Shown here: piece after piece, positions 13,606 through 60,662 of the stretch
How positions within the stretch are numbered: the first letter of the stretch is position 1
How the letters are laid out: each line of letters starts with the position of its first letter
Origin: Utricularia gibba
Lineage: Eukaryota; Plantae; Magnoliophyta
DNA length: 64,000 bases
Direction: 5' to 3'
Assembly: GCA_002189035.1 (NCBI GenBank)
Contig: NEEC01000012.1
Coordinates: forward strand, 1,116,001-1,180,000
Notes under the pieces: generated by a model
Told to the model about the DNA's origin: nothing
Database searches by the model: none
The model's input: the letters and a program-made list of their open reading frames with translations, nothing else
Program-made: the position numbers and the translations under genes

Positions 13606-14283
<678 letters not shown>

Positions 14284-15859: not shown

Positions 15860-18396
15860 CACTCACATTTATATTTTTTTAGAACTATCTTAAATGGTTT
15901 TTGTATCCTTTTGATTTCAGTTTTCCTATGTTTTTAAATGAATTTTATATCTTTCATATTATTTTTATCTTTTTGGAGATAAAAAGTTATTGTAATTTTT
16001 CATTACAATTTTGGCTTAATTTAAAGGAAATTCAAGCTTACCTTTAAATGGACAAATATTTAGTCTATTTGAATGAATATTTAATCAAGATTATTATATA
16101 AGATAAGATTTAAATCTTATTGTTGTGTGTCGTTTCCTCAACAAATTTTAAATATTTTAAAACGTAAAACACTAGAAGGCGTAGTACGAGTATCAATCTC
16201 AGGGAGTTGTTTTTCGTGAAAAGTGTTTGCAAGCAACTTCTACAAAATGTCACGGTTTTGTAAAAGGGGTTTTTAAGATGCAGAAATGAAAGATACAACC
16301 TAAGTAATGGGCTTTGACTACGGGACGCAGTTCCTGGAAATAAGACTCCATCTCCTTCCTTTGTCCGTCCTTGCCTCGGTTTTCACTGATTTCTTCCGAA
16401 TAGCTGATTATAGGAGCAAGGAATAGCCTAATCTCCCTTACACTCTGATTGACAAGGAGGCACGGGAATAGCCTCATGTGATTCCCCTTTGGACGATTAG
16501 GAAGACAAGAGGATTGCCTTCGATTGCCTTCAAAACCGAATTGTGCGCGTATGCCCAGCTATTGCCAATGGCCAGTGGCAGGTCTGAGGTCACAACCTGT
16601 CCACTATCGCGGTACCTAGGCCACAAACAATCTGCTACTTCCCTCAAACCAGTAGGGTTGGAGTTGGTGCTCTTCACCTTAATCTTCACCAAAATCCGCA
16701 AGAAGTGGCCTGCTACTCATGGATCTTGACTAAGAGTCGTTATAGAAAGACTGCAACAAGATGCGTGGAAGTATGCGGAATCCGAATTGAATTCAGTGAA
16801 GAACCGAGTGTATTGCTCAGGACTTGGAAGGAAATTTCATCTACTTCCCAGAAACTAAAGGTTTTTAGCCCGAAAGGGCCATGAAAACAGAAACGAAAAG
16901 AAACTAAGTGTTCTTCCTCCTTGAGAGGAGGAAGAACTCAAAAGTTCTAAGTACAAGAGAAAAATGTTCAAAAGTCCTAAACTAAGTGCTCCAAGTGCCT
17001 TTTATATGACTTCCCACGTGCATTAACTCCTTTGGGTCCCCTTCCCATCATTCCTTCTGTCTTGCGTGCGCCAACAGACTTTCTTTGCGTGCAAGTTTGC
17101 GCCCAATAATTGCTGCAGACTCTGACATGCCGTAAGTCATGGGCCTTGACCAGTGTCAGTCTTCCGCCCACAATCATTCCAACTTGCGTACAAGGCACGA
17201 AAACTCAGAGTCTGACCACCTGCAATACTCCTGCAACACTCCTGACAGTCTCCTGACATGCCTCGGTCAAAGTGTGAGAAAAAAATGCATAAAATATACA
17301 CAAAATGGGAAAATAGGAATTTTCTAGTAAAAATCAAATACTTAATAATAAGACTCATAATTGGGCGATTTAGCACTTAATTAATACATAATAATACCTA
17401 AATAATAACTAGAAAATGACAAATCACACTTATTTATGTCTTATCCTAGAAGATTCGGATAGAAGATTTAATATGAGTGCATCAAAAAAGCTTAATAAAT
17501 CTCTACCATTATATAAAAACTTGAGTACCAAATTGTTGAAAGAGACCAAAGACCTGAGTCTTAAAGTCAGTCTTGAAGTCAAGGATCAAGTCTTGCACCT
17601 TTGAATTCATTTTACATCTTTTTTCATCTATTCTCATGTGTTAAAGTGAAACAAGTGCATGTTAGACCTTGTGGCTAAGGATCTATGATGATTAGCTAGA
17701 ACCCTAGAAATATCTTAAGGTGAAGCATGGTGGTGTGGGTCTAGAATTCTTAGTAAAATTCATCATTGTTCCTTAGTTCTTGTTTCTAACATTCCATGGG
17801 TAGACCTAAGGAGGGGAGCAAGTAACTTTGCAACTAAGAAGCTTGGTTTAGAGATAAACCAACAAATCAAGGCGGGCATAGTAGGTGTTAGTCCGGAGTA
17901 AAACCAGTAGAATCAGGTAGACCTAGTTCTATATACTTTACATACGAGTCAACCTAATTGCAAGGTTGGTAATGATATTTGAGACTAGATTAGCCGAAAA
18001 TTTAACAAATAACCTGAGTAGACCTAGGTGATTTGAGGTTATGAGTATAGGAACATGGTATGTTAACTTGCATATTTTAGCACCATCTGCAAACCCTTAA
18101 GGCATCCTCGTATTATTCTGAATTAGAACCAGTTGTTGTTACCTTCTGCATTGAAACTTGACTTCATTTATTGAACTTACTTGCCATTGCTATTCCGAGC
18201 TTAGACTAAAATCATTGTATTCCAAATTATGCATCTATTAAAATACTTAGCAAGCACAAGCTTTTTGTGATCGACCCTGAATTTCACTATACACTTTGTA
18301 TTTAATTTGTATTTTGTGAAGATTAGGGATTATAAATTTATTTGATACGGGGATCTGCTTTATTTGTAATGACATTGCTCAAATTTCCATTTATCA
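15860..18396 (+). mobile_element. Athila-type LTR (family A-like) interrupted by a family B solo LTR
   Basis: 17430-18396 shares gtagacctag motifs and the terminus gattagggattataaatttatttgatacgg...tttatca with 58953-60329. Left boundary approximate. Confidence 0.6.
16121..17428 (-). mobile_element. Solo LTR (Ty3/gypsy family B), 1308 bp
   Basis: On the minus strand it reads TGTGAT...CAACA, with perfect 5-bp TSD CTTAT at 16116-16120 and 17429-17433. Homologous to 19581-20150 and 36780-37845. Confidence 0.85.
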
Positions 18397-19580
18397 GTAT
18401 GACTATAACCCCATACATGTTTTGTAGGGACGTTTGCGAATGAGGGCATGGATGGGATCGATGTGGTGGATGGTGAGGATGGGGCAGCCGAGTGATGGTG
18501 GTATCACGCACACGCGCAAGATGCACGTCACAGGACGCCTTGCGGGTGAAGTGTGCTGTTGCAATCACGCTAGTAGCATGTGGAGATGCTTTGCCTGACT
18601 AGGGTGTCGTGATGGATTGTCACACTGGGCCATATCCTCAGAGTGGGTTAACGCCATGAGACTAGGATAATCTGTTTAAGGTAGGGATAAATTGGTGTTT
18701 TCATCTTTTACAGCAGTCACTATAGATGAAAGTGTAGTCCCAACCGACCCTGCCCGGCCCAGCTTTCATGTAGGACAATAGTAGTCGCCATGCAGTGCTT
18801 CACTTTAATAATTTGGGTAAAAATGTCTTTCATCTTGCACAATAGTAGTTGACATACAAAACTTTGTTGTTCATAATTTAGAGAAACACTATTTTTTTTC
18901 TTTTTCTTTTCCAAAAATTGTAAGATTCTCACACAATTTAAATAAATAAATAATTAATTACACAATTTTGGTAAAATCAACTTTTGACGGAATATTATAA
19001 AATTGTGTTCAACTCATTATTCTATTTATGTTTGAATTAATTGAAAAATTAAACATATTACAAAAAATAAAAATAGTTTTGAATTTAATATTTTAAATTC
19101 TATATTAAAATTTTTTAATTAGATATAAAAAATAATAAATTCAAGTTGAAGTAAATTTAACTAAGAGACGTCATGAGTGGGAAGGAGCATGTTTTCAGAG
19201 TATCCAAAACTTGCCATCCTAGAGTGAAAAAGTTTAGGAACAACTTTCATAAGGTCAATGGAATGTGAGGACTTAGAAAAGCATGTTTCATTATTTCATC
19301 TAAATTTTCAAGGTGAATGGAGGAGAAAAGATCAAGATTTTCTGTCAAAGTTATAAGCAACAGTTGAACTTTTGGACAAGGATACTTTCACCAAGGGAAA
19401 GTGAATTGTAGCTGAGGCTAACAAAGGGGAAGTAGGAGAAAAGAAAACAATGGAACCATTGGAAAATTGACAAGTGGTTGGAACCATGTCTTTCCTAAAT
19501 TGCATCGGAGAACATGGCTTCACTCAATATTTATTCAATTGTAATTTTATATGAATAATAATATATTATTTGAGACAAAG

Positions 19581-20150
19581 TGTTGAATGTTGTTTCCTCA
19601 ACAAATTTTAAATATTTAAAATGTAAAACACCAAAAAGCGTAGTACGAATATTGATCTCAGGGAGTTGTTTTTCGTGAAAAGTGCTTTGTAAGAAACTTC
19701 TACAAAATGTCATGGATTTGTAAAAGGGGGTTTTTAAGATACAGAAATAAAAGATACAACCTAAGTGATGGGCTTTAACTACGGGACGTAGTTCTTGGGA
19801 AGACGATTCCATCTCCTTTCTGCGTCCGTCCTTGCCTCGGTTTTTACTGATTTCTTCCGAATAGCTGGTTATAGGAGCAAGGAATAGCCTACTCTCCTTT
19901 ACACTCTGATTGACAAGGAGGCACGGGAATAGCCTCATGTGATTCCCCCTTGGATGATTAGGAAGACAAGAGTATTGCCTTCGATTGCCTTCAAAACCGA
20001 ATTGTGCGCGTATGCCCAACTGTTGTCAATGGCCAGTGGCAGGTCCGAGGTCATAACCTATCCACGGTCACGGTACCTAGGCCACAAACAATACACTACT
20101 TCCCTCGAACCGATAGGGTTGGAGTTGGTGTTCTTCACCTTAACATATAC
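19581..20150 (-). mobile_element. Truncated family B LTR (3' part)
   Basis: High similarity to 16121-16690; it yields the same spurious ORFs (MRLFPCLLVNQSV, MIPxWxIRKTR). Confidence 0.85.
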
Positions 20151-25408: not shown

Positions 25409-27674
25409 CCATAAATGGAAATTTCTCAATGTCATTGCAAAAATAGAAATTTTGTTATCAAATAAATTTATAATCCCTAATCTACACAAAATAAAAATTT
25501 AGAAAACTTATATAGTGAATATCGGGGTTGATTACAAAGAGCTTGTGCTTGCTAAGTCTTTTAGTAAATGCATAATTCGAAATAAAAGTTATCTTAATCT
25601 AAGCTCGGATCAACAGTGGTAAACAAGTTCGGTAAACAAGATCATGTTTCAATGCGAAAGGTAACAAGTACTTGTTTTAACTCAAAATAATACGAAGATG
25701 CCTTAAGGATCTGCAGGTGGTGTCATGCTAAGGTGCCTAATTTAATTTACCATGTTCCAACACTTACAACTTCAAATAACCCAAGTCTACCCAGATCATT
25801 CATCATATTTTCGGCTGAATTAGTCCCCATTATCATAACCCACATTGCAATTAGGTCTACCCTTATGTAAATCATATAAAACTAGGTCTACTAGGTTCTA
25901 CCCCGGACTAACACCTACTGCACCCGTCTTGATTTGTTGATCTATCTCTAAACCAAGCATCTTAGTTGTGAAACTACTTATTCCTCTCCTTAGGTCTACC
26001 CATGAATTGATAGGAACAAGAGCTAAGAAATGAACATAAATTTCATTATCAACCCTAAGCACACACCACCATATTTCACCTTAAGGCATCCCTAAGGCTT
26101 TAGCTACTCATATTTTGAAGGTAAAACATGATAACATTCACATAAAGCAACGAAAATGTCAAGAACATCGTGAAAGAGTTGGTTGCATAAACTGAAAAAC
26201 ATCAACAAATGAAAATAAAGCAGTAAGAGTTCTGGTTTCCGTATGCTACTGTTCCTGGGCCGGAACTATAGCGCTAGACTGGGCTCTGATGCTATTCTTG
26301 AGGATGAAGTTCTTCTACTCTCCTGGTTGAGTGCTCGTCGTGTTGGGGGAGAAGCCCCTCCTCGGGTTTGCCCGTCTACTCTTCCTTCTCCCTTCTCCAA
26401 AAATATCTTCATATCTTTTTACCATTTTTCAAAATCAGTCTACTATTTCTGACATCTGTACTATTCCTGGCCTAAGCCTGTAGACTATAGGCGATTGAAT
26501 AGTGCATTATGTATCCTCTTTTAATGCTGCCCATTCTTCCAAATCTTCACATGCACGAAATTCATGTCTCCTTCCTGATTTTTGAACGTTGATGCTGGAG
26601 TAGAAAAAAATGTTAATAACATGGGATGGGCTAAATCCTGTGATTTAGCCCATTAACACATAAAAAAACATTATGTCCTAAAATTTGGTAAAAATACTAA
26701 AAGATATAAGATAAACACTTAAAACATGATTCAAAAACATAATTTTCTTATTCTAATAATAGGAAAATTCGTATGTTATCACACTATGCTACAAAGACAC
26801 TAGACTTGTCCTCAAGTCCAAACTAAGACTAATAAAATCCTGTTTTCGAAAATTTTCATGATAGACATGAATGACCATGTTCAGATTTCAGATGCATGAA
26901 CCATAGGTGTACTTGTGTGCAAAATAGGTAACACTTCAACATGCATGAATAGATTATTCTTGGAGAGTGCTTTCAAAGATTAAAACAATGAATTAACATA
27001 TTCAAAGCAACCAAAAGATTGTGATTCTCAACTCGGTTTTTTCGTTTCTTGCATCTATCCCTCTCTTTTTTTTTGATATATATGAGATAGCAAATGAACA
27101 AACATTTCAAAATCAATCTAGACATAATTTCAAGACCTCTCTTAATACAAAGAGTGTTGGCCAAGTACTCTCACCTTATGAATCCAGGTCAACTTCCACT
27201 CCTCTAAACAAATTCATCCTGTCTTATTCATTCACTTCTCAACGAGTCTACACACGCTTTTCAATTGTGCGTTGCTTTTTAGACTCGGGTCTCATTGCTT
27301 TTCAAATGATGATGCTTTTCTTGACCCTTATTCTCTCTTTTTTTTTCATCAGCAATCCTTGTAGCAATGAAATATATCAACTCATGGAAACAAATCTAGA
27401 TTGTACTCTTTAGGTTCCTCTAATCATGCTTGCACTCACATAACAAAATAATTGGGATTCATGCTCACAAGGTTTCAGAAGGCTTCAAACAAAGCTCGTG
27501 CATCCTAATCATCACAAGGCTATCATATCCCATGATTGAATTATTCGAAACGGGATTTGGAGTATCAAGTAAAAACACATTCTACAAAAACAAACAAATA
27601 ACTCCTAGCATAGAATTAGAGACATAAATGGTCCAAAGTGGATGGACTCAAATTGTGTGTAAGAAAACCTGAAT
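25409..27674 (-). mobile_element. 3' end of an Athila-type element: 3' LTR (25409-26781, ~1373 bp) plus 3' non-coding internal region
   Basis: The LTR starts TGATAAC at 26781 and is homologous to 30164-31541 and 58953-60329. The upstream motif ttagtcttag..gacttgaggacaagtc is shared with 44809-44838. Confidence 0.8.
26782..26798 (-). other. tRNA-Asp 5'-end-like 17-mer at the PPT position
   Basis: Minus-strand gtctttgtagcatagtg vs tRNA-Asp(GUC) nt 1-17 GTCGTTGTAGTATAGTG (recalled): 15/17, directly abutting TGATAAC. Confidence 0.7.
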
Positions 27675-29649: not shown

Positions 29650-32600
29650 CTCTGCTTTTATTTGTGAATTTCATCTAAAATAACTTATTTAAATATTGAA
29701 GTACCGGTTAACATCTTGTCAAATGCTGTGTAGTTTAGCTTATTCATAAGATTTACGGTTGAAAGCCCATTTTTTCTTTTACAAGTCAATTTGGACTTAT
29801 TGTTACTACATTTATTTTTTAATAGAATATTTGTAGGATATTTATTCAGTATATAAATATTTTGATGGAGAAATATTTTTAGACCCATGGAAACTAGAGA
29901 AATTTCCATCCAATCAATCAGTAGAAAAGAATCCTTTCAGATAGACCTTTGTGGCTCCATTGATTCCTAGATCAACATGCTAAGAGAAACTCCTATTGAA
30001 GTTCACTATCAATCTTTAGGTAATTATTATGAGATTTATGGAGGAAATTTGAGAGTAAGAAGAATACACCAATAAATTCTCTTTTAAACATTGGAGACAT
30101 TGTTGGTCACATTTTTCTTTATCAAGAAGTTGAAGAAGCCATGTGGGGTTTTGTGAGGCCTCTTGATAACACATATTTCATTAGTGTTTTAAGTTATAAA
30201 ATTGATATGTTTAATGATAAAATTAGGTTTTTTAATTATAATTTTTAATATTTTTTTAATTATAGTATTATTTGTTTTTTTATGCATAATATAAATTAAA
30301 TCCATGATTTAGTCTATATTTTGATTTCTAATATTCTTCCGAGTGTTAGCAGCAGCATTATGAATCACATTTAGCTAGTTTATGAGAATAATTCAAAGGG
30401 GCACAAGACATAAGGAGGAGACATTATTAATATTCAGCCCTCTATAGTCTTCAGGTTCAGGTCAGAAATAGTACAGATGTGAAGAATAGTGGATTGACTT
30501 TGGAAAATGAAAAAAATTTTATGTGAAGATATTTTAGGAGAGGGGAGGAGGAATATAATACAACCAGACCCTAAGAGGGGGAGGAAGAATACGAAAGAGG
30601 GAAGATGAAGGTGATTTCTCCAGAAGTAAGACTAAAGACTTGAAGAACAGCATTAGAGACTCAATTCAGCACTACTCTATCGAGCAGTGAACAGTAATAG
30701 ATCGCGAACAAAACACTCTACTTTATCTTTAGTTGCTGGATGTTTCGTTACTTTGACTGTTTTTTTACAATGTCTTTGTTATTCTCTTCAATTTATCTTA
30801 ATGATATTATGCTTTATCTTCTATACATGAATAGCTAAGCCTTAGGGAATGTCTTAAGGAATAGAATGGTGGTGTGAATTTAGGGTTAATAATGAAATTT
30901 ACATTTCTTTCTTGTTTCTATTATTCCATGGGTAGACCTAAGGAGGGGAACGATTAACTTCGCAACTAAGATGTTTGATTTAGAGGTAGATCAACAAATT
31001 AAGACATGAGCAGTTGGTATTAGTTCAAGGTAAAACCAGTAGAATCGGGTAGACCTAGTTTGATATATACTTTGCATGCGAATAGATCAATTTACGGGAT
31101 AGGTGATGATATTGAGGACTATATTTGCCAAAAACATGATGAATAACTTGGGTAGACCTAAATTATTTGGAGTTGTGAATATAGGAACATGGTAGATTAA
31201 GTTAGACATTTTAGCACCACATCACCTGCACACACTTAAGGCATTTTAGTATTACTTTGAATTAGAACCAGTATTTGTTACCTTTAGCATTGAGACGTGA
31301 TTGTTTTTTTTTTATTGAACTTGCTTACCACTTTTAGTCCGAGCTTAGATTAAGAACTACCATTATTCCGAATACTACATCTACTGAAACACTTAATAAG
31401 CACAAGCTCCTTGTGATAGACCTTCAAATTCCACTATACATTTTGTGTTTAATTTTTATTTTATAAGGATTAGGGCTTATAAATTTATTTGATACGAAGA
31501 TTTCTATTTTTGTAACGACATTAGAAAATTTTCATTTGTTACCTTTTCATGTATGTGATACCTAACTAGGCAAAGGAATCCTACGATGCTAGCAAGAATT
31601 AAGATCTCTCACGACATTTATTTATGGAGTTTTGCAATTTCAACGTATCAAGAAAAGCAAGTTTTTAAACAAAAAAATAAATTTTCGAATCATACTCAGC
31701 AAAATATGGAGATATTTATGACATAAAAGAATAACCCGAAATTTCACAATAAAATGATAGACATAACTACCATGAAACTACTTATTAGCGAGTTAATAGA
31801 TAATTTGTAATGGCATGCATCCCACATCCTGGACCAAGCAAATTCTCTAAGTTTTGAACAAGTTAAGGGTTTAGACCCTAAACAAGTTACCTCTGCATCC
31901 AATTCATTAGGATTTGATGATCTTTTAACAAAACTGTTAGTTCAATATATTGAAGAAAAAATTTTTATTTTGGAAACAACATCATCATCAAAATGTAAAT
32001 GTAGTATAAAGTTATGTCAATCTATTGAAATATGCTATGCCACAAGTGAATGTTTTCAAAAATAAATAAATCCGAATTGTAGGATGATTGACCCCCCCTT
32101 AATTCAGTTCGTATGAATCTTTTTCGGGAGCTGAGGTAAATGCATCACAAGCACATCAATTAGTAGATTTGGGAGGATTAATGTCGAGGACAAATGATTA
32201 ATTCACCCATCCAAATCAAATTAGGGGAAAGACTTTCTTTAACAAAGCATATCATTTATTGCCATACGGATGTCGAATGCTAAATATCATATGTGTAGAA
32301 TTGTTCAAGTATAGTTATACACTGAACCGATTTGGTACTATCCATGCTATTTCTTTGAGTCCTCCCGATGCAATGATACTAAAAAGAATTTTTATCCAAA
32401 CATTAAAGGGTCATAATGTATATATTGGCATCTGGGTGAATGGCCACCCAAAATCAAGACAATGGAATTAAATTTATGAATAAAATCATAAATCAAGAAA
32501 ATCTATCGTATTCAAACTCCTTTTACTTGAGTGCATCTTGATTCTATGGACTATGCTATGGCCCAAGGGATCTATAAGAAAAGTGACCACTTTTTTACCT
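29650..32600 (-). mobile_element. Degraded LINE (L1) relic: ORF1 (DUF4283/zinc knuckle-like) then ORF2 endonuclease, interrupted by a solo LTR
   Basis: Minus-strand peptides PFNVWIKIL..LKEIA and TFTCG (~32030-32450), then VDLGING...FFSTD*L (~29900-29990), in ORF1-to-ORF2 order. Confidence 0.4.
30164..31541 (+). mobile_element. Athila-type solo LTR (family A), ~1378 bp
   Basis: TGATAACAC start and degenerate tttgtta end. Flanks cctct (30159-30163) and ccttt (31542-31546) are a 4/5 TSD. Confidence 0.8.
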
Positions 32601-37845: not shown

Positions 37846-38805
37846 CAGTCTTCCGAAAATCAAGGGAATGTCAGCTTGGGAAGATCCAATTTGTTGCCAT
37901 CTGATGATTTATTTCTCTCTTTTTCTGCCACTTGTGCGTCTCTATAAAAACTCAGGAAAGGTGGAGAGAGAAGCAAATCTCCCTTTGGAGACTCACGAAC
38001 ACATTTTCTGGGGAGAAGGTTTTCTAGGGAGGAAGAAGGAAGACAAATAGGATCGAAGCTGAAGTTCAAGATTATTTTCTGTCTTCGAAGAATATTACTC
38101 TTAGCTAAGAGTAGCTAGTGACGTTTTTCAGTTTTTGTTGACACTTCACATTACTTGCTTGTTTGCTTTCTGGTATTTGACTGTGAAATGAGCACATTGT
38201 GGGTGATGTTTTCTTTTCCACTTTCGTTTACCTTAAGCATGAGTGGCTAAGTACTTAGGGAGGTGCCTTGGGGTAAAAAGGGGAGAAACATGTTAATCAA
38301 CCTTCAGATCTAAACACCCATGAGTCACGCCACTTCCTTAACAAACCAGGATAGATCGAGGATGGGGAAGTAGTGAAACCCAACTTACCAACCCTAATTA
38401 GAGGTAGACCAAAGATTAGGGGGAAAAACAAGAATCCAGGAAGACCTAGATCTTGTGAGTTAGTTGTATGATTTGTGGTTTGTGTGAGTTTGTTTAGTGA
38501 TGAGCATACATCCCCTAGGAGTCCCAAGACATCACTCATTCCATTCCAGAAACTACCGAATCCAAACTTGTTACTTTTCTTTACTGTATTTCGTTGTAGT
38601 CCTAACTTAGTCCTAGTTAAGATCAATTTTACCAACGTGACACTGATTTCATGCTTTGGCTAATCACTTGACAAGCACCTGCTCTTCGTGTTCGACTCTA
38701 ATCACTATGCTCATAATTGTTTTATGCTTGAATGTGGGTTAGGTTATAAATTTATTTGATAGGAAAATTTGCATTTAACGACATTGCATAATTTTTCGTT
38801 TATCA
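37846..38805 (+). mobile_element. Athila-type LTR 3' part (family A2)
   Basis: TATA-like ctctataaaa at ~37940 and terminus ggttataaatttatttgata...gtttatca. Inverted homolog at 1-650. Confidence 0.75.
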
Positions 38806-43065: not shown

Positions 43066-44710
43066 ATGATGCCAGCGACACGAAGCGCAAAGAAGGCCAC
43101 AAAGGAGAAGTCTGGCCAGAAAAAGATGAGAAAGGAGCAAGCGAAGGAAAGAACAGGAGATGCTGAAGAATCCACCGCTGTTGCTCCGACCCAGGAAGAA
43201 GTGGTTCAGCCTACCGCTGATCCCTCAAACAGCAGAGGTGGGAGAGCCCTCTACACGGAAAAAGCAGAAGGAACCATCCTCCAAATTGGAACACACCAGT
43301 CTGCATCAACGATTGAAGGGCATGCATGCGACTTACAAGAAGAGAAAAGCTCCAGTGGAAGAACCACCTGCAGAGCCGTAGGTCTCGCCTAAGAAACAGG
43401 GGAAGAAACATGGAAAGAAAATGCAGAAGGCACCACTGGAGGAACCTATGCCTGAGAAAGAATCTGCTGCACCGGAAGGACACACGCTGTCCACCACGGA
43501 GAAAAATGCAGAAATTTCCAGAAACTAAGAAGCAGCAAAGGAAGAGCCTAAGGCTGAAAATAAAATTCTGGAAATAAAAATATAACGGGACGTGCATAGG
43601 AAATGGACGAAAGGGGTGTGCAGCCACTAGTCCGAGGTCAGAAAGAGTAGGGAACTCCACCTGCAGAAACTGTTGTGAGCACAACCAAAGAGGAGCAGGG
43701 AGAGATAGAGAAGGTAAAGAAATTCCTCCCAAAATTAGTCCCTATGTTCATGAATGCAGGGAAATTTGTAATGGAAAGGGAGCGGTTTCAAAGACAAATG
43801 ACCGGAAAGGGAATCCCTTACTTCAAGCATCATGCAAACATGTTGAATGAAAAGTACCTGAAGTTCGAAATAGCAGAACATATGGATCGGAATGGAGAGG
43901 TAAAAGGTATTACCCTGCCGTCATATTGATTTCGAAATTCTTGTTGAATTGAACATAGTAGACAAGGTTTACACCATGTTTGAGAATTCTGACTTCATCA
44001 TTTTATTTGAGTTAAAACTCCCTGCTTATGTGGAACTGTCCTACGAATCTGCCTCCACATTTACTTACAAAATTCCAGAAACTGTTTTAGAGCCTACTGT
44101 TGTTTCCTTTTGTTTGATGTGCGCTGAATTTTTGTTTTCATTGGCTGAGTGGAATGTTGCCCTTGGTTTTTGTTCAAAACACCAAGTAGATTCGCATAAT
44201 TTTGCTGCTTCTTTATTCGATTATCCAGTAGACTTTGATGCTGAAGAATTTTATGGAATTTTGACTAATCAGCATGTCATTGAATTTAAGGCAAAAGGAA
44301 CAAAGGGTGAAAGGGTGAGCAAAGATATTAAAAGAGTATGTGCGAACTCAATAAGTAGTGAAAGGGTGAGCAAAGATATTAAAAGAGCATGTGCGAACTC
44401 AATAAGTAGTGAAAGGGTGAGCAAAGATAAACTAATCCGGAGGAGTATGAAGGAGCCTAGTGTTATAAGGTGTGAGTGCTTGGCCAACACTCTGATGAAG
44501 AAAAGGGGCAGTCACATTATGGCTGGATTAGTCTGGAACAAGCTGCCCCTTCACTACCCAAAAAAAAAAGAAAGGAAAAGAAAAAAAAAGGAGAAGAAAA
44601 AAATTGAGTTGGCAACCGTGATCTTAAGTGACTTTGGAGGGATCAATTCTATAAGGTATTATCTTCGAAAACACTCCTCAAGAGGAATCTACTCATTCAC
44701 ATTTGAGTGA
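43066..44710 (+). pseudogene. Athila accessory (ORF-1/env-like) ORF, frameshifted
   Basis: Lys/Glu/Ala/Pro-rich N-terminus, then AYVELSYESASTF...VSFCLMCAEFLFSLAEWNVALG, resembling the ATHILA ORF-1/plant-transposon-protein domain. Confidence 0.65.
44309..44429 (+). repeat. 51-bp in-frame tandem repeat (~2.4 copies)
   Basis: gaaagggtgagcaaagata at 44309, 44360 and 44411; the unit encodes ERVSKDIKRxCANSISS. Confidence 0.9.
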
Positions 44711-44841
44711 TCAAATGACATGCTCACTTGCATTTCTGTAGCTCTTGCACCGAAATTTAGTCTTAGTTTTTATGTTCATCACTGATGCTAAAGGAATCGG
44801 TTTTCTGTTAGTCTTAGGTAGGACTTGAGAACAAGTCTGGT

Positions 44842-44858
44842 GTCGTTGTAGCATAGTG
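44842..44858 (+). other. tRNA-Asp 5'-end-like 17-mer at the PPT position
   Basis: gtcgttgtagcatagtg vs tRNA-Asp(GUC) nt 1-17 GTCGTTGTAGTATAGTG (recalled): 16/17, directly abutting TGATAAC at 44859. Confidence 0.75.
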
Positions 44859-46354
44859 TGATAACACACAAATTTTCATGTTTTAGGATATGAAAAATCA
44901 TAAATTTTTAATTATGTTTAAGTGTTAATTTCATAGTTTTAAGTATTTTTATTTGATAAGGGAAAATATGATTGTTGGTGTATTAGTGGGCTAAATCAAA
45001 GGATTTAGCCCACCCCATGTCTAACCCGATTTCGGAATCTAGCAGCAACCCGAAAGTCAAGTAAGAAATCTAGGTGTCATGCAAGTCACCAGGCTGCAGG
45101 GGGCAATGAGTACACTGTTACGGTGGCAGTCTGCAAGTCAGGGCCATGAGCAGCAGATTTGTTAAAGAATGTACTTGCCTTGGAGGCGAGAGAAAGATGA
45201 GGAGGAGAGAGAGTCACAAAAAAAGAGGGGGGGAAACAAGCAGCATTTTCAGAACACACACGAGGGGTTTTCTCCCCCAACTCGAACACGAAGAATAGTG
45301 AAGGAGAAGGGGAATCGAGTAAACCTAGTTCTAGATGCTTTGCATGCGGGTAGACCTAATTGCAATGTTGGTGATGATATGGGGGACTAGCTTAATCGAA
45401 AATATGATGAATGATCTAGATAGACTTATGCTATTTGAAGTTATGAGTATAGGAACATGGTAAATTAAATTAGGCATCTTAGTGTCATTTTGAGTTAAAA
45501 CCAATACATGTTACCTTAGCGTTAAGACTTGATGTTGTTTACTTATTTTTTTTACTGAACATACTTGCCATTGCTAGTCCAAGTTTAAACTAAGGCTTAC
45601 CATTACTTTGAATTCTGCATCTGCTGAAATACATGACAAGTACAAGCTCCTTGTGATCGACCCCGAATTCCGCTGTACACTGTTTTTAATTTGTATTTTG
45701 TGATGGTTAGGGACTATAAATTTATTTGATACGGAAATTTGGTTTTAGTGCAACGACATGCTAAAATTACCGTTTATATATAGAAGTACATTCCAGCTAT
45801 TCTTTTTTTTTAATTCCTACGTTTTTCAAGATCAAATATTTATTTTTTAAAGATGATAATTTTATTTTATGTGATATCTTACCATGCCCATGCTTGGTCA
45901 ATGCTGCTTTATGACAATCTCGATGAGTCGTTGAGACTCCCTGACATTTGGTCAAGATAGTCAAACAGTCTAGATGAGTCATCAAGATTGTTCATTTTCT
46001 AGATGACTTATCGAGAATGAATCCTATTTCTCCAATTAATTGTAAAAGTAGCCTATATTTCGCTTTTCCCGTGCCTGGATGGACTGTATTGTTGAAGAAA
46101 TGTACAAGCCAATTGTCTCAATTATCTCTCAAACTGTACATCCAGCATTTCACACTTTTTTTTTCTAGGAACTAGCTGCTGATATGTTTAAGTGCTTCCA
46201 GGCTAGAGCCTAAGACAGCAGAGTAAAGCCGGTTTGCTATAGATAAATAATGAATTATATTGTTCGGCCCATAACCCCATATGAAGTATATGTTGTTAAA
46301 AGTTTATATAAAAGCATATAATATAAAAGTATATTATACTTGCCTTATCATGCC

Positions 46355-54600: not shown

Positions 54601-56161
54601 TCTTAGAAGCTGACCATCATTACCGATTTCTACTAATGGTTCTCTATTTTCTATATTTCGAGCAGCACCATTCTCTAACAATTGATCTTCATCCTGCACA
54701 GGTAAAAGGGAGTTAGAAGCTGAATTTAAATGTAGCTTGATTACCTGATTTTTCTCAACAACAAGGATGTCATCAATGGTCTGATCCTTATAAAATCTAG
54801 CATCTGTAGAACTGAAAACCTTCTTTTTTCAATGCCCCAAAGCCTACATCCCATCTGATCTTCTCCACAGCCAAGCAATATACACAATATTGTTCTTTCA
54901 TCCAATGTCTATCTATTTTCTTTCAGAATATGAGCATAGGCTCTACACCCAAATACCTTGGTTTCCTTCCTATCCAGATTTCTTAAGGAATGTAAAACTT
55001 CAAAGGTGTTTTTGGAGATCTGTTTGATAAAAAACATGTGGTTTTCAAAGCTTCTCCCTCAAAAAATTTAGGCAGCTTAGCAGTCCTCAACATGCATCTT
55101 ACTTTGTTCATAAACCTTTCTCCATTTGCATTATATACTGGAGTCTTTAGTGTTGTTATTTTCTTGATTCCTTCAGTTTTGCTGTAGTTTTCAAACTTAG
55201 TTGAACAATATTCATCACCGTTATGAGACTTGAATATTTTTAGTCTTTTGTTTGTTTGTCTTTCGAGCAGATCTTGAAGCTCTCTGAAGTGCTGAGATAC
55301 ATCACTTTTTTTTTCCATTAATGTAACCCAAGACTTTATTGAAGCATCATCAATGAAAGTGACATGAAATCTTTTTTCCCCTACTAATGCAACTTCAACT
55401 AGGCCTCTCACGTCAAAAACATCACTTTAACAGTTCTTCACTTTTCTTAAAAACATTTTTAGCTCCTATTCTATAATCTTTCCCTGCTATGCAATTTTCA
55501 CATATGATTTTAGGAGGTATCTCTTTTTCAATTAGATTATGCTGTTCTAGAAATCTCATTCTTTGCTATAGAGGTGTCCTAGTCTCTTTTGCCACAGAAT
55601 ATGACTAGTTTCTATGTAGCTAGTGAGATTCAAATCAGATGGATCTAACTTAACTGCTATTCTATACGAGGTTCCATTTAGCTCTCCTTTGGCCACAACT
55701 GTGGATGCTTTGACTAGTTTTCATATGTTATTTCCAAAGGACCTGATATATCCTGCTTTATCTAGGTGATTTACTAACATCAAAGTTAATCTTATTGAAA
55801 TAAATGGTCATCTGAGTGATAAGGAAGAATGAAGAGATAAGGCTGATTGGAGTAATAAGGAGGCTGACCATATTATGTTGGAATGTGCTGATCATCTAAT
55901 GATTCATGCTATCCCTCCTATACACGATGAAGTTGAAAGATGCCATCTCTATCCAAGAAGATGAGGGTTACTTAATGCAAAGATCACAACGGCACCAACA
56001 ATTAGGAGATTATACTTAGTCTTCTCCAATATTTTAGGAAATAGTTTAGGACCCTTAACTAACGTTAACCATCTTTTTCTATTTAAGTTGTATCATTGTA
56101 CGCTCCTGGTGTGAAGAAATCAATTTGCTTCTTATCCGGTTGTCATCCATCGTCTTCCTAT

Positions 56162-56173
56162 TGGTATCAGAGC
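56162..56173 (+). other. Primer binding site (tRNA-iMet)
   Basis: TGGTATCAGAGC immediately after the 5' LTR. Confidence 0.9.
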
Positions 56174-58952
56174 AAGCGGCTGTCATCCTTCAGCCGTCCT
56201 TTTCTCTTTCCTCTCACATTCACGCTTCCGCACATCCTTCCTTCCCTCCACCATGGCAACTGGAAATGCTATTAATGTGTCAAACTTCATCACCGTCAAA
56301 CTAACCAGCAGCAATTACCCGCTCTGGAAAGAAATGGCTATTGGGCTTGCAGATAGCCAAGGTCTCTCCGGCCATCTAACCGGTGAGACAACACCACCAC
56401 CAGAATTTGATCTCCAACCAGGAGTGCAGGATTCATCTACACCAGCAAACCCATCTACAGAATTCATAAAGTGGAAACAATCAGACCGTCTCTTGCGTAG
56501 CTGGCTCTTAGGTACAATTTTTGAAGAATCATGGCCGCTGGTTATCGGTTGTGAAACCGCCGCCAATCTTTGGTCTGCTCTTCGAGATGCATATGCCAAA
56601 AAATCTGAGGAGCGTCATTATACCGTGAGGTATCAATTCGCTCAAAACCGAAAACGCGCAGATCAAAACCTGGATGAATATCTCCGTAAATTTAAGTCCA
56701 TCTGTGACCAATTAGCTGCTATTGAAGACCCAGTCGCTGAAGATGAGAAGGTTTATTTCCTTCTCACAAGTCTTGGATCTGGCTACGAGGCGTTCACCAC
56801 TTCCATGCTCAAATATCCACGTCCCTCGTTTAGGGATTTAATCTCACAACTGCAAAGTTTTGAGATGCGAAAACAAATCAATGAAGACATTGAACGGCAG
56901 TACACCTCACTCTCTTCCCCTATGGCATATCAAACCCAATACAAGAGTGCACCGTCAACAGCTCACTTTACCTCTGACGGTCGTGGGTTTCAAGCACAAC
57001 GCAGCCAATTCCCTCAACAACAACAACAACAACCTCTTGCAATGACTCATCAACAGCCTCGCACTCAATCTCGCCAAGGACGTGCACCCCCACCCCCACC
57101 AGGAAAACGTCAGATGACACCATTTGAAAGAGATCTCTATAAAAATGAAGTCTGTCAAATCTGCAATGTGACAGGTCACATTGCCAAAATCTGCTGGAAA
57201 CTCCCAGGTCCCCAAGCTGAGCCAAAGACTGATGCAATTCCACAAACCCTGGCAAACCTGACTCTCGACAACTCCCTCACCGAAACTGAGTGGATTGCAG
57301 ACACTGGTGCTACCAATCACATGGCAGGTACAAAAGAAGTTTTTATTGATCTTCAATCTTATACAGGTCATGATGGAGTTAAAGTTGGTGATGGCACATC
57401 ACTACCCATTACGGGTATCGGTACATCTAAACTCACACAGGGAACATCCACTATGCCATTAAAAAATGTATTATTTGTACCAAAACTAACAAAAAATCTC
57501 CTTTCTGTTGCACAGATGACAACACAAGAACCTGTTAATTGTGAGTTTACTAATTTTGGTTTTTTTGTCAAGGATCGAGCAACAGGTCTTCCCAAGTTGA
57601 CCGGCCATCGCACGGGTGATTTATATGTAGTGAATCATTCACATGAAGCCTTCTTTTCATATCGTTTTCAGTCTTCCACACCAGACATATGGCATCAACG
57701 TCTTGGGCACCCCCAGGATTCCATGGTGCCAATTCTTAAAAATAAAGGCTTGATTACAGTTATTAAACCAAATCAGCCTTCCTTCTGTGATAGTTGTCAA
57801 TTTGGAAAAATGTCAGAACTTCCATTTGCTGAGTCCGAAAATATTACTACTATTCCTTTTGAAAAACTTTACTGTGATCTTTGGGGCCCTTCACCTGTCA
57901 TTTCTCGAAATGGGTTTCGTTATTATGCTTGTTTCGTTGATGCATATTCACACTTTATGTGGTTTTTCCCATTACGAAAAAAAGTGATTTTGTGGATACC
58001 TTTCTTCAATTTGAAACCTATATAGCTCGACAGTTTGACAAGACCATTAAAGTGCTTCAAACCGACAATGGTGGAGAATTTGTCAATGAATGTCTCAAAT
58101 CTCATTTTTTAAAAACCGGTATGATTCATCAACTCTCTTGTCCGTACACTCATGAACAGATGGGAATGGTAGAGCGACGACATAGAACGATCAGAGAACA
58201 CGGAATGACCCTACTCTTCCATGGCGGATTACCACTATCCCTGTGGGTTGAAGCCTTTGCTACAGCCGTTCATCTTCAAAATAGACTACCATCTCCTTCA
58301 CTCAAAAGGGAGTCTCCTTACTCAATCCTATATAATCGCAGCCCCGATTATTCAATATTACGTGTTTTTGGTTCGAAATGCTTTCCGTATTTATGGGATA
58401 GTAGGAAGAATAAATTTTCTCCAAAAACTGCATTATGTGTTTTTATTGGATATAGTGAAAGCCACAAAGGATACAAATGTTATGATCCACAAACAAAAAA
58501 AATACACATTTCAAGACATGTCATTTTTTATGAAAAATCGTTTCCCTTTAAGCATCTTGTAGTACCGACATGCTGTCCCCTGAAAAGGTCTCTAAACTGT
58601 TTGCACTGTGGATGCAGGAAACACTAGGTTCAAAGACTTCTCAAGAACGTGCTCCTACACTAGAACACAACGTTGCAACCACCGGAGAGTTATCACCGAT
58701 AACTTCATCAATGACTTCTACTCTACCTACAATAATTCAGACTGAATCGGTGGCCCTTCATCCCGTTGATTCAGAGCCGAGTCAGAATGATAATTCAGAA
58801 TGATGAGCATCAACACCAGACATAGAGTCTCCAACTGGGTTAACAAATGACACCATTACTTCGAGCGCCACCAGCCATGATTGCTTGAGTGACCCATGTG
58901 AGGTGGGGACACTCTCCCTTACACCCGTCAGAGTAGAAGATGGAGTCCATAT

Positions 58953-60329
58953 TTATAACACAAAATAGCTATATTTTATTATGATTTGAGTTAGATAAAT
59001 ATGGGTTTTAATGCTTTAGTGGTGTTTATGTTAATCTTATTTGATTATGTTAAAAAGTGGACTAAATCCTTTGATTTAGTCCACAACTTTTGTTACTAAT
59101 GTTTTAGTAAGTTTAGCAGGGAAATCAGCAGAAAATCAGACGTGCAAACATGTGGAACAAGTGAAGAAGGGCGCAAAATCCGGAGAAGAACAAAGAGCAA
59201 TGTTTTGCTGCTACCGTAGTCTGCAAGTTCAGAACAGGAACAGTACTGACAGTCAGAAACAATGCAATGGAGTGAAGCAAAAGAAAAGGAAATTAATTTG
59301 AAAAAAGAAGGAGAGCGTAAAGAAGCGAGGAGCGAGGGGGACGCAAAGGGGGGTCTTCTTCTCCAACAGGAAAAACACCAACCAGAAGGGGGAAGGGAGG
59401 CCTCCATCATCAAGAACAGCACCAGAGCCCAGTCTAGCGCTACTGCTCCGGGCTGTGAACAGTAGATAGCGGGCGGAAAAACATTATCTATTTGCTTTCC
59501 GTTTTTCTGAACATTTCAAGTTTCTGAATTTGAATTGTTACAATGTTTCTGCCATTTTGGCCAGCTTATGTGAATGAAATTGTGTTTTATTTCCAAAGCA
59601 TGAGTGACTAGAGTCTTAGGGATGCCTTAAGGTGAAGGGGTGTGGTGTGTGCTTAGGGTTAATGATGAAATTTATGTGTATTCCTTAACTCTTGTTTCTA
59701 GCAAACCATGGGTAGACCTAATGAGGGAAACAAGTAGTTTCACAATTTAGAAGCTTGGTATAGAAGTAGACCAAAAAACCAAGATGGGAGCAGTCGGTGT
59801 TAGTCTAGAATAGAACCAGTAGAACCGGGTAGACCTAGTTGTATATACCTTGCATGCGGGTAGACCTAATTGCAATGTTGGTTATGATATTGGGGACTAG
59901 CTTAAGCGAAAAAAAAAGATGAATGACCTGGGTAGACCTAGGTTATTCGAAGTTGTGAGTGTAGGAAGATAGCAAATTAAGTTAGGAACCTTAGTATGGC
60001 ACCACCCGTAGATCCTTAAGGCGTCCTCGTATTAGTCTGAGTCAAAACCAGTACCTGTTACCTTAGCGTAGAAACCTGATATTGCTTATCTACCTTGTTT
60101 ACTGAACTTGTTTACCTCTGTTGGTCCGAGCTTAGACTAAGACTTCCTGTTATCTCGAATTATGCATTTACTAAAACACTTAGCAAGCACAAGCTCTTAG
60201 TGATCGACCCCGACATCCACTATACAAGTTTTCCAAATTTGTATTTTGTGTAGATTAGGGATTATAAATTTATTTGATACGGATTTTCTATTTTTATTAC
60301 AACGATATTAGGAAAATTTCCGTTTATCA
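58953..60329 (+). mobile_element. Athila-type solo LTR (family A, ~1377 bp) inserted in the copia integrase-RT linker
   Basis: (t)ttataacac...gtttatca; flanks ccata and ccatg; homologous to 30164-31541 and 25409-26781. Confidence 0.85.
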
Positions 60330-60516
60330 CCATGACACGCTTCCCCCCTCCTATGACATGTCCTCTCTCTCTCCTGCATCATCTAATGATGTTCAAGACT
60401 TAGATGGAGATGATCGTATCAGCTCACCACCAAGTGCAACAAAGCAGCAACCTCCCGCTCAACCTGCTGGTGTCTTACCCCTACGTGTTGGGACTAATGA
60501 AAACTACCCACTATCA

Positions 60517-60662
60517 GGAGATGCACCAGATAATGAGAATAATGAAGGCGACAGGGAGGAGTGCACGCCTACGGATCCAGGACCTCAAGGCGATGCACCA
60601 GATAATGAGAATAATGAAGGCGACAGGGAGGAGTGCTCACCTACGGCTCCACTACCTCAAGG
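60517..60662 (+). repeat. 72-bp in-frame tandem duplication
   Basis: GDAPDNENNEGDREEC(T/S)PT encoded twice, starting at 60517 and 60589. Confidence 0.9.

What the first reader, a model, noticed from the sequence alone, without database searches (positions are those of the whole stretch)
44809..44870. Athila 3' LTR preceded by the 5' end of tRNA-Asp instead of a polypurine tract: candidate tRF-primed plus-strand synthesis
Seen: between the element's 3' internal region and the 3' LTR (TGATAAC, 44859) there is no purine tract. The 17 nt abutting the LTR are gtcgttgtagcatagtg, preceded by a hairpin gacttg-agaa-caagtc. Established: LTR retrotransposons normally prime plus-strand DNA from a PPT at exactly this site (Athila: ...TTTGGGGGAG-like); Athila PBSs typically use tRNA-Asp; plant cytosolic tRNA-Asp(GUC) begins GTCGTTGTAGTATAGTGG (recalled from memory); D-loop-cleaved 5' tRNA fragments of ~15-20 nt exist in plants. 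The match is 16/17, starts at tRNA nt 1 and ends in the D-loop; chance for one given 17-mer at a fixed site is ~52/4^17 = 3e-9. The single difference (C for T) would form a G:U wobble between the tRF and minus-strand DNA. Inference: this lineage may use a 5' tRF-Asp as plus-strand primer, possibly both ends of one tRNA species for both priming steps. Alternatives: a one-off template switch onto tRNA fixed in an ancestor, or a tRF target site on antisense RNA. The first 11 nt tggtgtcgttg could also pair with the tRNA-Asp 3' end. No PBS of this family is visible in this window, and I cannot check the literature for prior description.
Basis: partly seen in the sequence, partly recalled or inferred. 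Interest (0 to 1): 0.92.

Follow-up and report, generated by a model that had tools for sequence, protein, structure and literature searches.

The report
tRNA piece replaces retrotransposon primer tract
In two old, truncated copies of an Athila-type plant retrotransposon, the G-rich purine tract that normally starts second-strand DNA synthesis is replaced by the first 17 bases of tRNA-Asp, the tRNA that relatives of this element use to start the first strand; this hints at an unusual way of priming but does not prove one.

Summary
GTCGTTGTAGCATAGTG (44842-44858, +) abuts the LTR start TGATAAC (44859). It matches 16 of 17 bases of the plant tRNA-Asp 5' end as printed in three papers. A second copy lies at 26782-26798 (-), at the same junction of an independently inserted copy.

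The element is Athila-type, on the + strand, and this is its 3' LTR. An ORF just upstream (43904-44440) has homologues carrying Pfam ATHILA ORF-1. In annotated relatives that domain lies between integrase and the 3' LTR.

Nine 3' junctions from Sesamum and Buddleja relatives share the same covarying hairpin and a GTGT. They then carry a G-run tract (GGGGG/GGGGA plus three or four bases) before the LTR. In the window that tract is replaced by tRNA-Asp nt 3-17.

The replacement is therefore real, derived and inherited. Whether the tract is the plus-strand priming site is inference, and priming by a tRNA fragment is a further inference. Both copies are old and 5'-truncated. No 5' LTR, PBS or young copy of the lineage could be examined. 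The usual 19-nt 5' tRF-Asp would mismatch at its 3' end. Priming from an upstream purine tract is not excluded.

The parts
44842..44858 (+). 17-nt tract identical to tRNA-Asp nt 1-17 except T11->C. It occupies the place of the G-run polypurine tract.
44823..44836 (+). Conserved hairpin (5-bp stem, 4-nt loop; extends to 44821-44838) lying 23-24 nt before the LTR. It is shared with Sesamum and Buddleja Athila-type elements.
   Evidence: Alignment A7. Covariation: 88.9% of cells paired, 3 of 5 pairs with compensatory changes, 0/500 shuffles reach the score.
44859..45779 (+). 3' LTR, copy D. It is shorter than the other copies through internal deletion. It starts TGATAAC; its end is degenerate.
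43904..44707 (+). Open frame whose first ~180 codons are a remnant of the ATHILA ORF-1 domain, the domain found downstream of pol in this lineage. It fixes the element's orientation. The tail is tandem-repeat and purine-rich sequence.
44560..44606 (+). Uninterrupted A/G tract about 250 nt upstream of the LTR. Similar tracts lie 530-660 nt upstream in Sesamum relatives that also have the border G-run. It is a possible alternative plus-strand start.
44465..44493 (+). 29-nt island conserved with copy B (93%). It contains the palindrome TTGGCCAA.
45596..45757 (+). LTR 3'-terminal region of copy D carrying short blocks antisense to the tRNA-Asp 5' half: CTTACCA at 45596 and CAACGAC at 45751. Fuller sets occur in copies A, C and E.
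26782..26798 (-). Second copy of the tRNA-Asp-like tract (GTCTTTGTAGCATAGTG), abutting LTR copy B.
25409..26781 (-). 3' LTR, copy B (1373 nt). Its 3' flank is unrelated to that of copy D.
26799..27245 (-). Internal 3' remnant of copy B, collinear with 44400-44841 of copy D.
30164..31541 (+). LTR copy C of a related subfamily. It starts TGATAACAC and has no tRNA-like tract upstream; a G-run (TGTGGGG) lies 15 nt upstream.
58899..60329 (+). LTR copy E nested in a Ty1/copia element. Its 5' bound is ambiguous (58899 or about 58954). It has no tRNA-like tract.
17688..18396 (+). LTR fragment A (3' half only).

Best explanation
Shown: an Athila-type (Ty3/gypsy) lineage has lost the G-run polypurine tract that abuts the 3' LTR in its relatives. 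In its place is a sense copy of tRNA-Asp nt 1-17: about 15 new bases, plus a GT that was already there. At least two separately inserted copies carry it.

Inferred origin: during minus-strand synthesis the reverse transcriptase switched from the genomic RNA, at the U3 border, onto a packaged tRNA-Asp. It copied the tRNA to its 5' end and returned to the genome at the GT microhomology.

Inferred function: because the lineage went on inserting, the tract most likely serves as the plus-strand initiation site. The primer could be the element's own RNA, spared by RNase H. It could instead be the 5' end of tRNA-Asp annealed to the minus-strand DNA and cut about 17 nt from its 5' end. From general knowledge, that is the distance at which retroviral RNase H cuts from an RNA 5' end. 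I lean slightly to the tRNA-supplied primer. A random replacement of the tract should be lethal, whereas one matching an RNA that the particle already packages need not be.
For: - Sequence and position.
- Identity with tRNA-Asp/miR6300.
- Orientation and lineage: the + strand ORF has 32 homologues. Seven of ten homologues scanned hit PF03078 ATHILA. In P0095 the domain follows RT_RNaseH and rve. In L043 and L044 the gene order is the same. tblastn back to the window hits only 43874-44440 (+).
- Ancestral state: nine junctions in L037, L043, L041, L044 (three), L038 and L045 read ...GTGTGGGG(G/A) plus three or four bases before a TGATA/TGTTA LTR start. None has the tRNA 17-mer at up to 3 mismatches.
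- Literature: the ATHILAfinder preprint reports a conserved junction with a polypurine tract in 97% of Brassicaceae ATHILA. The FIDEL paper calls 'ttgggg' the conserved core of Athila-like tracts.
- Shared context proves homology of the site: the hairpin box, the GTGT, and a 23-24 nt spacing.
- Two insertions: copies B and D have unrelated 3' flanks and LTRs about 78% identical. The tract differs at only 1 of 17 positions, and the junction block from -34 to +16 is 88-92% identical.
- Relatives use the tRNA-Asp-type PBS.
- Their LTR ends, and those of this family, carry blocks antisense to the tRNA-Asp 5' half. So this part of the tRNA may already be engaged by the lineage.
Against: - Only two copies were seen. 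Both are old and 5'-truncated: gag and pol are absent from the window.
- No 5' LTR, PBS or target-site duplication of this lineage could be seen. So it is not shown that its LTRs still begin at TGATAAC.
- Conservation of the tract (1 difference in 17, against 3.7 expected at 22% divergence; P about 0.09) is no higher than that of several other LTR islands.
- An uninterrupted purine tract lies 250 nt upstream and could prime instead.
- The common 19-nt 5' tRF-Asp would have two 3' mismatches against the LTR start.
- Both copies have C where published tRNA-Asp has T11. The host tRNA could not be read: there is no tRNA gene in the window or the fetched loci.
- No relative of the family outside this window was found.
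Confidence: 0.45

Rival explanations
1. Passenger patch. The template switch destroyed the border tract. The lineage survived because plus strands start at another purine tract, such as 44560-44606, which lengthens the LTR at its 5' end, or because it was copied only a few times. The tRNA-like tract then has no function of its own.
For: A 47-nt pure A/G tract followed by TG lies 250 nt upstream and has a counterpart in copy B. Such tracts are ancestral in Sesamum relatives. Conservation of the tRNA-like tract is not significantly above background. Only 3' LTR contexts of the lineage are visible.
Against: The alternative start (TGAGTT) matches the LTR end poorly as an inverted repeat: 3 of 6, against 6 of 6 for TGATAA/TTATCA. 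In copy B the corresponding dinucleotide is CG, not TG. Related LTR copies C and E align from TGATAAC, not from further upstream. Relatives with upstream purine tracts still use the border tract.
Confidence: 0.27
2. RNA pairing element. The sense copy of the tRNA-Asp 5' end pairs with the blocks in the LTR 3' end that are antisense to that same part of the tRNA. It could bring the genome ends together or compete with the primer tRNA. This would be comparable to the Ty3 bipartite primer-binding site or other long-range 5'-3' contacts.
For: Collinear antisense blocks (CTTACCACT, CCACTATAC, (TA)CAACGAC and others) are confined to the last ~220 nt of the 1.4-kb LTRs. The chain test against shuffled queries gives P<=0.0015 in copies A, C and E. 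Similar blocks occur at -60 to -42 or at -19 in four unrelated Athila-type LTRs. The Ty3 precedent is described in PMC5371799.
Against: Predicted duplex energies between the tract and its own LTR end are no better than shuffles (P 0.17-0.27). The antisense blocks fit the tRNA (T11) better than the tract (C11). This role does not explain why the tract ends exactly at the LTR border, nor how plus strands start without the G-run. The block analysis was post hoc.
Confidence: 0.13
3. The element runs the other way. The tract is then a primer-binding site, or a small-RNA target, complementary to the tRNA-Asp 5' fragment just downstream of a 5' LTR.
For: The geometry is symmetric and the LTR ends are inverted repeats, so sequence at the junction alone cannot tell the two readings apart. 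Half-tRNA primers are known in Ty1/copia lineages.
Against: The ATHILA ORF-1 remnant is on the + strand, upstream of the junction. In relatives that domain lies between integrase and the 3' LTR. The junction context is homologous to 3' junctions of relatives whose LTR pairs and PBS fix the polarity. The LTR's variable part is on the left and its conserved part on the right, as expected for U3 and R-U5.
Confidence: 0.03
4. Chance resemblance, or gradual point mutation of the G-run tract.
For: In one register the canonical junction already shares 7 of 15 positions with tRNA-Asp nt 3-17.
Against: A match of 16 of 17, starting at tRNA nt 1, to the tRNA that relatives of the element use as primer. 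Shuffles give 0.05 matches per window even at 3 mismatches. Eight simultaneous substitutions toward one tRNA are not credible.
Confidence: 0.02

Closest known systems
Canonical Athila-lineage (Ty3/gypsy, Metaviridae) 3' junction, as in L037/L043 (Sesamum radiatum), L044 (S. indicum), L041 (S. alatum) and L038/L045 (Buddleja alternifolia), and as described for Brassicaceae ATHILA and peanut FIDEL
   Same: Long LTRs with TG..CA ends and a TGATA-type start. An ATHILA ORF-1 domain lies downstream of pol. A covarying hairpin lies 23-24 nt before the 3' LTR, followed by GTGT. A/G-rich tracts lie further upstream. Relatives have a tRNA-Asp-type PBS.
   Different: The G-run tract between GTGT and the LTR is replaced by tRNA-Asp nt 3-17. 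The 3' non-coding region is shorter: about 0.4 kb from the ORF remnant to the LTR, against about 2 kb.
Half-tRNA primers of Ty1/copia lineages (Drosophila copia, Ty5, Osser, Bianca)
   Same: A fragment of a tRNA, rather than its native 3' end, is proposed to prime reverse transcription.
   Different: Those prime the minus strand from a site complementary to the fragment, next to the 5' LTR. Here the tract has the same sense as the tRNA, lies next to the 3' LTR, and would concern the plus strand.
Hepadnavirus plus-strand primer (from my own knowledge, not tested here)
   Same: The plus-strand primer is not a polypurine tract. It is a 5'-terminal RNA oligomer of about 18 nt left by RNase H, which anneals where the minus strand carries a matching sequence.
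   Different: That primer comes from the viral pregenome, not a host tRNA, and the virus family and genome architecture are different.
Ty3 bipartite primer-binding site and tRNA contacts in U3 or U5 of retroviruses
   Same: Sequences near the genome's 3' end, or in U5, relate to parts of the primer tRNA outside its 3' 18 nt. The antisense blocks in these LTR ends fit that pattern.
   Different: Those sequences are complementary to the tRNA. The tract studied here has the tRNA's own sense.
5' tRF-Asp(GUC), often listed as miR6300
   Same: Same sequence as the tract (nt 1-17, one change). It is abundant in many plants.
   Different: Reported species are 18-24 nt. Nothing links them to reverse transcription.

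Membership tests
Athila lineage LTR retrotransposon | LTRs longer than 1 kb with TG..CA ends and TGATA...TATCA-type termini | tested here: met
   LTR copies are 1.37-1.38 kb, with TGATAAC...TTTATCA ends. The TATCA terminus is reported for ATHILA.
Athila lineage LTR retrotransposon | ATHILA ORF-1 domain (PF03078) between pol and the 3' LTR | tested here: met
   The window ORF itself is below Pfam thresholds. Its homologues hit PF03078 above the cut-off and show the expected position.
Athila lineage LTR retrotransposon | [quoted passage not shown] | tested here: inconclusive
   There is no such PBS in the window, but no 5' LTR junction of the lineage is present either. Relatives have it.
Athila lineage LTR retrotransposon | gag and pol in Ty3/gypsy order | tested here: not met
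   No gypsy-type domain appears in any ORF of at least 60 aa in 1-55.8 kb (copia domains only in 55.8-64 kb), nor in ORFs of at least 35 aa near copies B and D. tblastn with polyproteins P0095 and P0104 hits only the ATHILA part. The copies are truncated, so this says nothing about the lineage.
Athila lineage LTR retrotransposon | G-rich polypurine tract abutting the 3' LTR | tested here: not met
   Replaced by the tRNA-like tract in both copies. This is the finding.
tRNA gene or tRNA-derived SINE | Cloverleaf, or at least A and B boxes and tRNA body beyond nt 17 | tested here: not met
   ARAGORN finds no tRNA. Rfam gives nothing near threshold. Identity stops at nt 17, where the LTR begins.
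Minus-strand primer-binding site | Complementary to a primer's 3' end and located just downstream of a 5' LTR | tested here: not met
   The tract is upstream of a 3' LTR and has the tRNA's sense. The TGG-like prefix is not conserved in copy B.
Plus-strand priming by a tRNA 5' fragment (proposed, no known members) | Primer-identical sequence ending exactly at U3 nt 1, with no polypurine tract | tested here: met
Plus-strand priming by a tRNA 5' fragment (proposed, no known members) | Carried by independent insertions | tested here: met
   Two copies with unrelated flanks and diverged LTRs. Two is a small number.
Plus-strand priming by a tRNA 5' fragment (proposed, no known members) | Present in young, full-length copies whose 5' LTR starts at the same base | not testable with these tools
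   The host genome is not in any searchable collection. The metagenome scan gave only chance hits. No same-species proteins were found.
Plus-strand priming by a tRNA 5' fragment (proposed, no known members) | Physical plus-strand 5' ends joined to tRNA-derived RNA | not testable with these tools
   Needs sequencing data from the host.

The most novel reading that the evidence does not exclude
One tRNA species serves both priming steps of an LTR retrotransposon. [quoted passage not shown] Its 5' 17 nt, annealed to the minus-strand DNA where the polypurine tract used to be, start the plus strand. The lineage would then be independent of an RNase-H-resistant purine tract.
Probability: 0.2. Interest if true: 0.9.

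Novelty: new variant of a known kind. Interest (0 to 1): 0.66.

Why it matters
All textbook schemes for retroviruses and LTR retrotransposons start the plus strand from a purine tract of the element's own RNA. Here a lineage kept inserting after that tract was swapped for a piece of the tRNA its relatives use as primer. One possibility is that the requirement for a purine tract is looser than assumed. The other is that a host RNA can supply the plus-strand primer.

Either outcome would bear on three things:
- how reverse transcriptases and their RNase H choose primers;
- how LTR borders are defined, and so how annotation tools that seed on polypurine tracts miss elements;
- the link between tRNA fragments and transposons in plants.

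The question is directly testable by a census of the family in the host genome.

Two side results would be useful for Athila annotation if they hold up: the covarying hairpin 23-24 nt before the 3' LTR, and the LTR-end blocks antisense to the tRNA-Asp 5' half.

Tried and rejected
- **Metagenome scan.** The junction 18-mer gave 33 hits, about the number expected by chance, and none had flanking similarity.
- **Protein searches.** A word-based search with the 253-aa ORF found nothing. The full HMMER scan was needed. An exact look-up of the copia ORF also found nothing.
- **Host species.** The best copia hits are only 46-63% identical. ATHILA-ORF homologues are mostly from Lamiales, so the host is probably a Lamiales plant, but this is not established.
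- **Rfam.** Scanning the junction and LTR gave nothing.
- **Single-sequence folding.** The junction does not fold better than shuffles. The hairpin became convincing only with relatives.
- **PBS-like reading of TGGTGTCGTTG.** Rejected. It has 4 mismatches to the 13-nt PBS, it is TAG... in copy B, and its first bases are ancestral Athila sequence.
- **SINE or tRNA-gene reading.** Rejected.
- **Reverse-orientation reading.** Considered seriously until settled the polarity.
- **Nucleotide BLAST.** The window's LTRs found no homology in the nine plant loci.
- **Junction sequences in papers.** Supplementary tables that list ATHILA junction sequences are not held as text, and one key paper is not held.
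- **Copy E.** Its 5' bound could not be settled.

- One search printed three-frame translations of two stretches of the copia element beside the nested LTR, so stops are visible in that output. In my reasoning I also compared reading frames across the nested LTR.
- The tRNA letters used in tools come from the papers cited. The finding's quoted tRNA letters were used once, as a literature search term.
- Consensus lines printed by the alignment tool were not used.
Full report
**What is in the sequence**

The 17-mer GTCGTTGTAGCATAGTG lies at 44842-44858 on the + strand. It is followed at 44859 by TGATAAC. No run of purines lies between them.

A self-comparison of the window shows five copies of one LTR family, 70-78% identical to each other:

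| Copy | Coordinates | Strand | Note |
|---|---|---|---|
| A | 17688-18396 | + | 3' half only |
| B | 25409-26781 | - | |
| C | 30164-31541 | + | |
| D | 44859-45779 | + | |
| E | about 58954 (or 58899) to 60329 | + | nested in a Ty1/copia element |

The family's ends form an inverted repeat, TGATAA...TTATCA. This fits the TATCA terminus reported for ATHILA.

Copy B is preceded, on its own strand, by the same tract with one change (26782-26798). Copies B and D also share collinear internal sequence for at least 450 nt upstream. This includes a 29-nt island and an A/G-rich tract. Their 3' flanks are unrelated. They are therefore two insertions, not one duplicated block, as far as this window shows.

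**Is it the 5' end of tRNA-Asp?**

The window and the fetched plant loci contain no tRNA gene, so I took the tRNA sequence from papers:
- a primer named tRNA-Asp_1F (PMC6521008);
- soybean small-RNA reads (PMC3519564);
- 'miR6300' with its flanking sequence (PMC5831935).

Against that sequence copy D has 1 mismatch in 17 (T11 to C) and copy B has 2. Shuffled windows give 0.05 matches even at three mismatches. The identity starts at tRNA nt 1 and stops at nt 17, exactly where the LTR begins.

Fragments from the 5' end of tRNA-Asp, 18-24 nt long, are widely reported in plants.

**Which way does the element run, and what is it?**

This mattered because the geometry is symmetric. On the opposite strand the same bases would be a primer-binding site for a 5' tRNA fragment.

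No gypsy-type protein domain is detectable in the window. However, the + strand ORF at 43904-44440, about 420 nt upstream of the junction, has 32 homologues in a full HMMER scan.
- Seven of ten homologues tested carry Pfam PF03078 (ATHILA ORF-1).
- In the 980-aa Sesamum radiatum protein P0095 that domain follows RT_RNaseH and integrase.
- The gene order integrase, ATHILA ORF, 3' LTR recurs in loci L043 and L044.
- tblastn of these proteins back onto the window hits only 43874-44440 (+).

So the element is Athila-type, + oriented, and copy D is its 3' LTR. Its gag and pol are absent from the window. Copy B keeps only about 0.45 kb of internal sequence.

**What relatives have at this place**

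Through the ATHILA-ORF homologues I fetched nine plant loci. Seven of them hold Athila-type elements with LTR pairs 91-99% identical:
- L037 and L043 (Sesamum radiatum);
- L041 (S. alatum);
- L044 (S. indicum);
- L038 and L045 (Buddleja alternifolia);
- L039 (Hibiscus).

Each has a PBS matching TGGCGCCGTTGCC, the tRNA-Asp/Asn PBS printed in the ATHILAfinder preprint, exactly or with at most two mismatches.

Comparison of each element's 5' and 3' LTRs fixes the border to the base. All nine Lamiales 3' junctions read ...GTGTGGGG(G/A), then three or four bases, then the LTR start TGATA or TGTTA (alignment A7). S. indicum LTRs even start TGATAAC. None of these loci has the tRNA-Asp 17-mer at up to three mismatches.

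The window's copies share three features with them:
- the box CTTGAG(G/A)ACAAG;
- the following GTGT (L037 shares TCTGGTGT);
- a spacing of 23-24 nt from that box to the LTR.

Between GTGT and the LTR, however, they carry C(G/T)TTGTAGCATAGTG in place of the G-run. The tRNA match therefore consists of about 15 new bases plus an ancestral GT.

The literature agrees that a G-rich tract is the rule. It reports a conserved junction with a polypurine tract in 97% of Brassicaceae ATHILA, and 'ttgggg' as the conserved core in FIDEL and Athila-like elements.

**The hairpin**

Across the ten aligned junctions it covaries:
- 88.9% of cells are paired;
- three of five pairs show compensatory changes (CTTG/CAAG against CACG/CGTG);
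- no shuffle of 500 reaches the score;
- every slid control collapses.

It is an ancestral element of these 3' ends, not part of the novelty.

**How it most likely arose and works**

*Shown.* The replacement is derived. It sits exactly at the plus-strand start site. Two separate insertions inherited it, and their LTRs have since diverged by about 22%.

*Inferred origin.* A template switch occurred during minus-strand synthesis, from the genomic RNA at the U3 border onto a packaged tRNA-Asp. The enzyme copied the tRNA to its 5' end and returned at a GT microhomology.

*Inferred function.* A lineage without a plus-strand start should leave no descendants. So the tract probably supports plus-strand initiation.

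Two primer sources are possible:
- the element's own RNA over the tract;
- the 5' end of tRNA-Asp annealed to the minus-strand DNA.

For the second, a 17-nt primer is needed, because the usual 19-nt fragment would end in two mismatches against the LTR start. From general knowledge, retroviral RNase H cuts 13-19 nt from a recessed RNA 5' end. That would give a primer of about the right length. This is reasoning, not evidence.

*Survivorship argument for a tRNA-supplied primer.* Among random replacements of the tract, the one matching an RNA already in the particle is the one likely to survive.

I put the general functional reading at about 0.45 and the tRNA-supplied primer at about 0.2.

**What speaks against it**

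- Both copies are old and truncated.
- No 5' LTR, solo LTR or PBS of the tract-bearing lineage is visible. So it is not shown that its LTRs still begin at TGATAAC.
- A 47-nt pure A/G tract followed by TG lies 250 nt upstream (44560-44606) and has a counterpart in copy B. If plus strands started there, the LTR would simply be longer and the tRNA-like tract would be a passenger inside U3. Two observations weigh against this. The alternative start pairs poorly with the LTR end as an inverted repeat. Sesamum relatives have similar upstream tracts yet use the border tract. It is not excluded.
- Conservation of the tract between copies B and D (1 of 17) is suggestive only. P is about 0.09 at 22% divergence, and several LTR islands are equally conserved.

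**A related observation**

The last ~220 nt of these LTRs hold collinear short blocks antisense to the tRNA-Asp 5' half. No other block of at least 7 nt antisense to it occurs elsewhere in the 1.4-kb LTRs. The chain test against shuffled queries gives P<=0.0015 in three copies, but the copies are homologous and the test was post hoc.

Four unrelated Athila-type LTRs carry similar blocks at -60 to -42 or at -19. This resembles the extended primer-template contacts known for Ty1, Ty3 and retroviruses. It suggests that the lineage already engages the 5' half of its primer tRNA.

It also raises a rival role for the tract, as an RNA that pairs with those blocks. Predicted duplexes are no better than shuffles.

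**Novelty**

I found no paper describing a tRNA-derived replacement of a polypurine tract, or a tRNA-fragment plus-strand primer in LTR elements. The library is incomplete, so prior description cannot be excluded.

I class the finding as a new variant of a known kind. The descriptive result is firm. The mechanism is open and can be tested by a census of the host genome.

Declared slips are listed under 'tried and rejected'.

Noticed in passing
window 45596-45779; also 18160-18396, 25409-25650 (-), 31300-31541, 60090-60329; L037 7228-7241, L038 3501-3518, L039 8078-8087, L041 about 3532-3543: The 3' ends of Athila-type LTRs carry short blocks antisense to the 5' half of tRNA-Asp (D arm and acceptor strand). 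This holds in this family and in Sesamum, Buddleja and Hibiscus relatives. They may be extended primer-binding contacts.
   Followed up: partly
window 44823-44836 and 26804-26817 (-); alignment A7 columns 15-28: A hairpin with a 4-nt loop lies 23-24 nt upstream of the 3' LTR. It is conserved, with compensatory changes, across Lamiales Athila-type elements.
   Followed up: yes
window 55793-62715: A Ty1/copia element with 369-bp LTRs 96.7% identical (55793-56161 and 62347-62715). Its polyprotein frame is broken at least four times and carries one nested LTR of the Athila-type family (copy E).
   Followed up: partly
window 58894-58960: The 5' bound of nested LTR copy E is ambiguous. An exact 5-bp direct repeat (CCATG) fits a start at 58899. 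A 4/5 repeat fits a start near 58954, where homology to the other LTRs begins. The 55 nt in between contain a G-run.
   Followed up: partly
window 30139-30163: LTR copy C is preceded by TGTGGGG and then 15 nt before its TGATAAC. This resembles the canonical G-run junction only weakly (z about 2). Copy C may be a 3' LTR with a shifted or padded border, or a solo LTR with a 4/5 target-site duplication (CCTCT/CCTTT).
   Followed up: partly
window 44307-44429: A 51-nt tandem repeat (2.4 copies, 98% matches) inside the open frame downstream of the ATHILA ORF remnant.
   Followed up: no
window 44465-44493 and 27151-27179 (-): A 29-nt island 93% identical between copies D and B, about 370 nt upstream of the LTR. 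It contains a splice-donor-like AAG|GTGAG and the palindrome TTGGCCAA.
   Followed up: no
window 44987-45012: A perfect 10-bp inverted repeat (GGGCTAAATC / GATTTAGCCC) early in the LTR. It is conserved in copy B and partly in copies C and E.
   Followed up: no
window 16098-16682 and 19558-20143: A pair of 585-bp direct repeats (89%) flanking a 2.9-kb stretch that contains LTR fragment A. This is probably another small LTR element.
   Followed up: no
window 1-645 and 37946-38598: An inverted repeat, 90% identical over about 650 bp, of unknown nature.
   Followed up: no
window 13606-14283 (+): An exon-like ORF with a polyprenyl synthetase domain (PF00348, E 2e-31). This is the only ordinary host gene fragment noticed.
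   Followed up: no
window 16.1-44.7 kb and 1-13 / 45-55.8 kb (ORFs not individually located); 54986-55426 (-): MULE transposase, SWIM and plant-mobile-domain hits occur among ORFs. A second copia-type RT fragment and an integrase fragment (54986-55426, -) are also present. The region is a nest of transposon remnants.
   Followed up: partly
L041 2089-4418 and 12811-14946; L044 whole locus: Sesamum loci show tandem or nested Athila-type arrangements, such as an LTR followed again by a PBS and internal sequence. L044 holds three junctions and three PBS sites within 21 kb.
   Followed up: no
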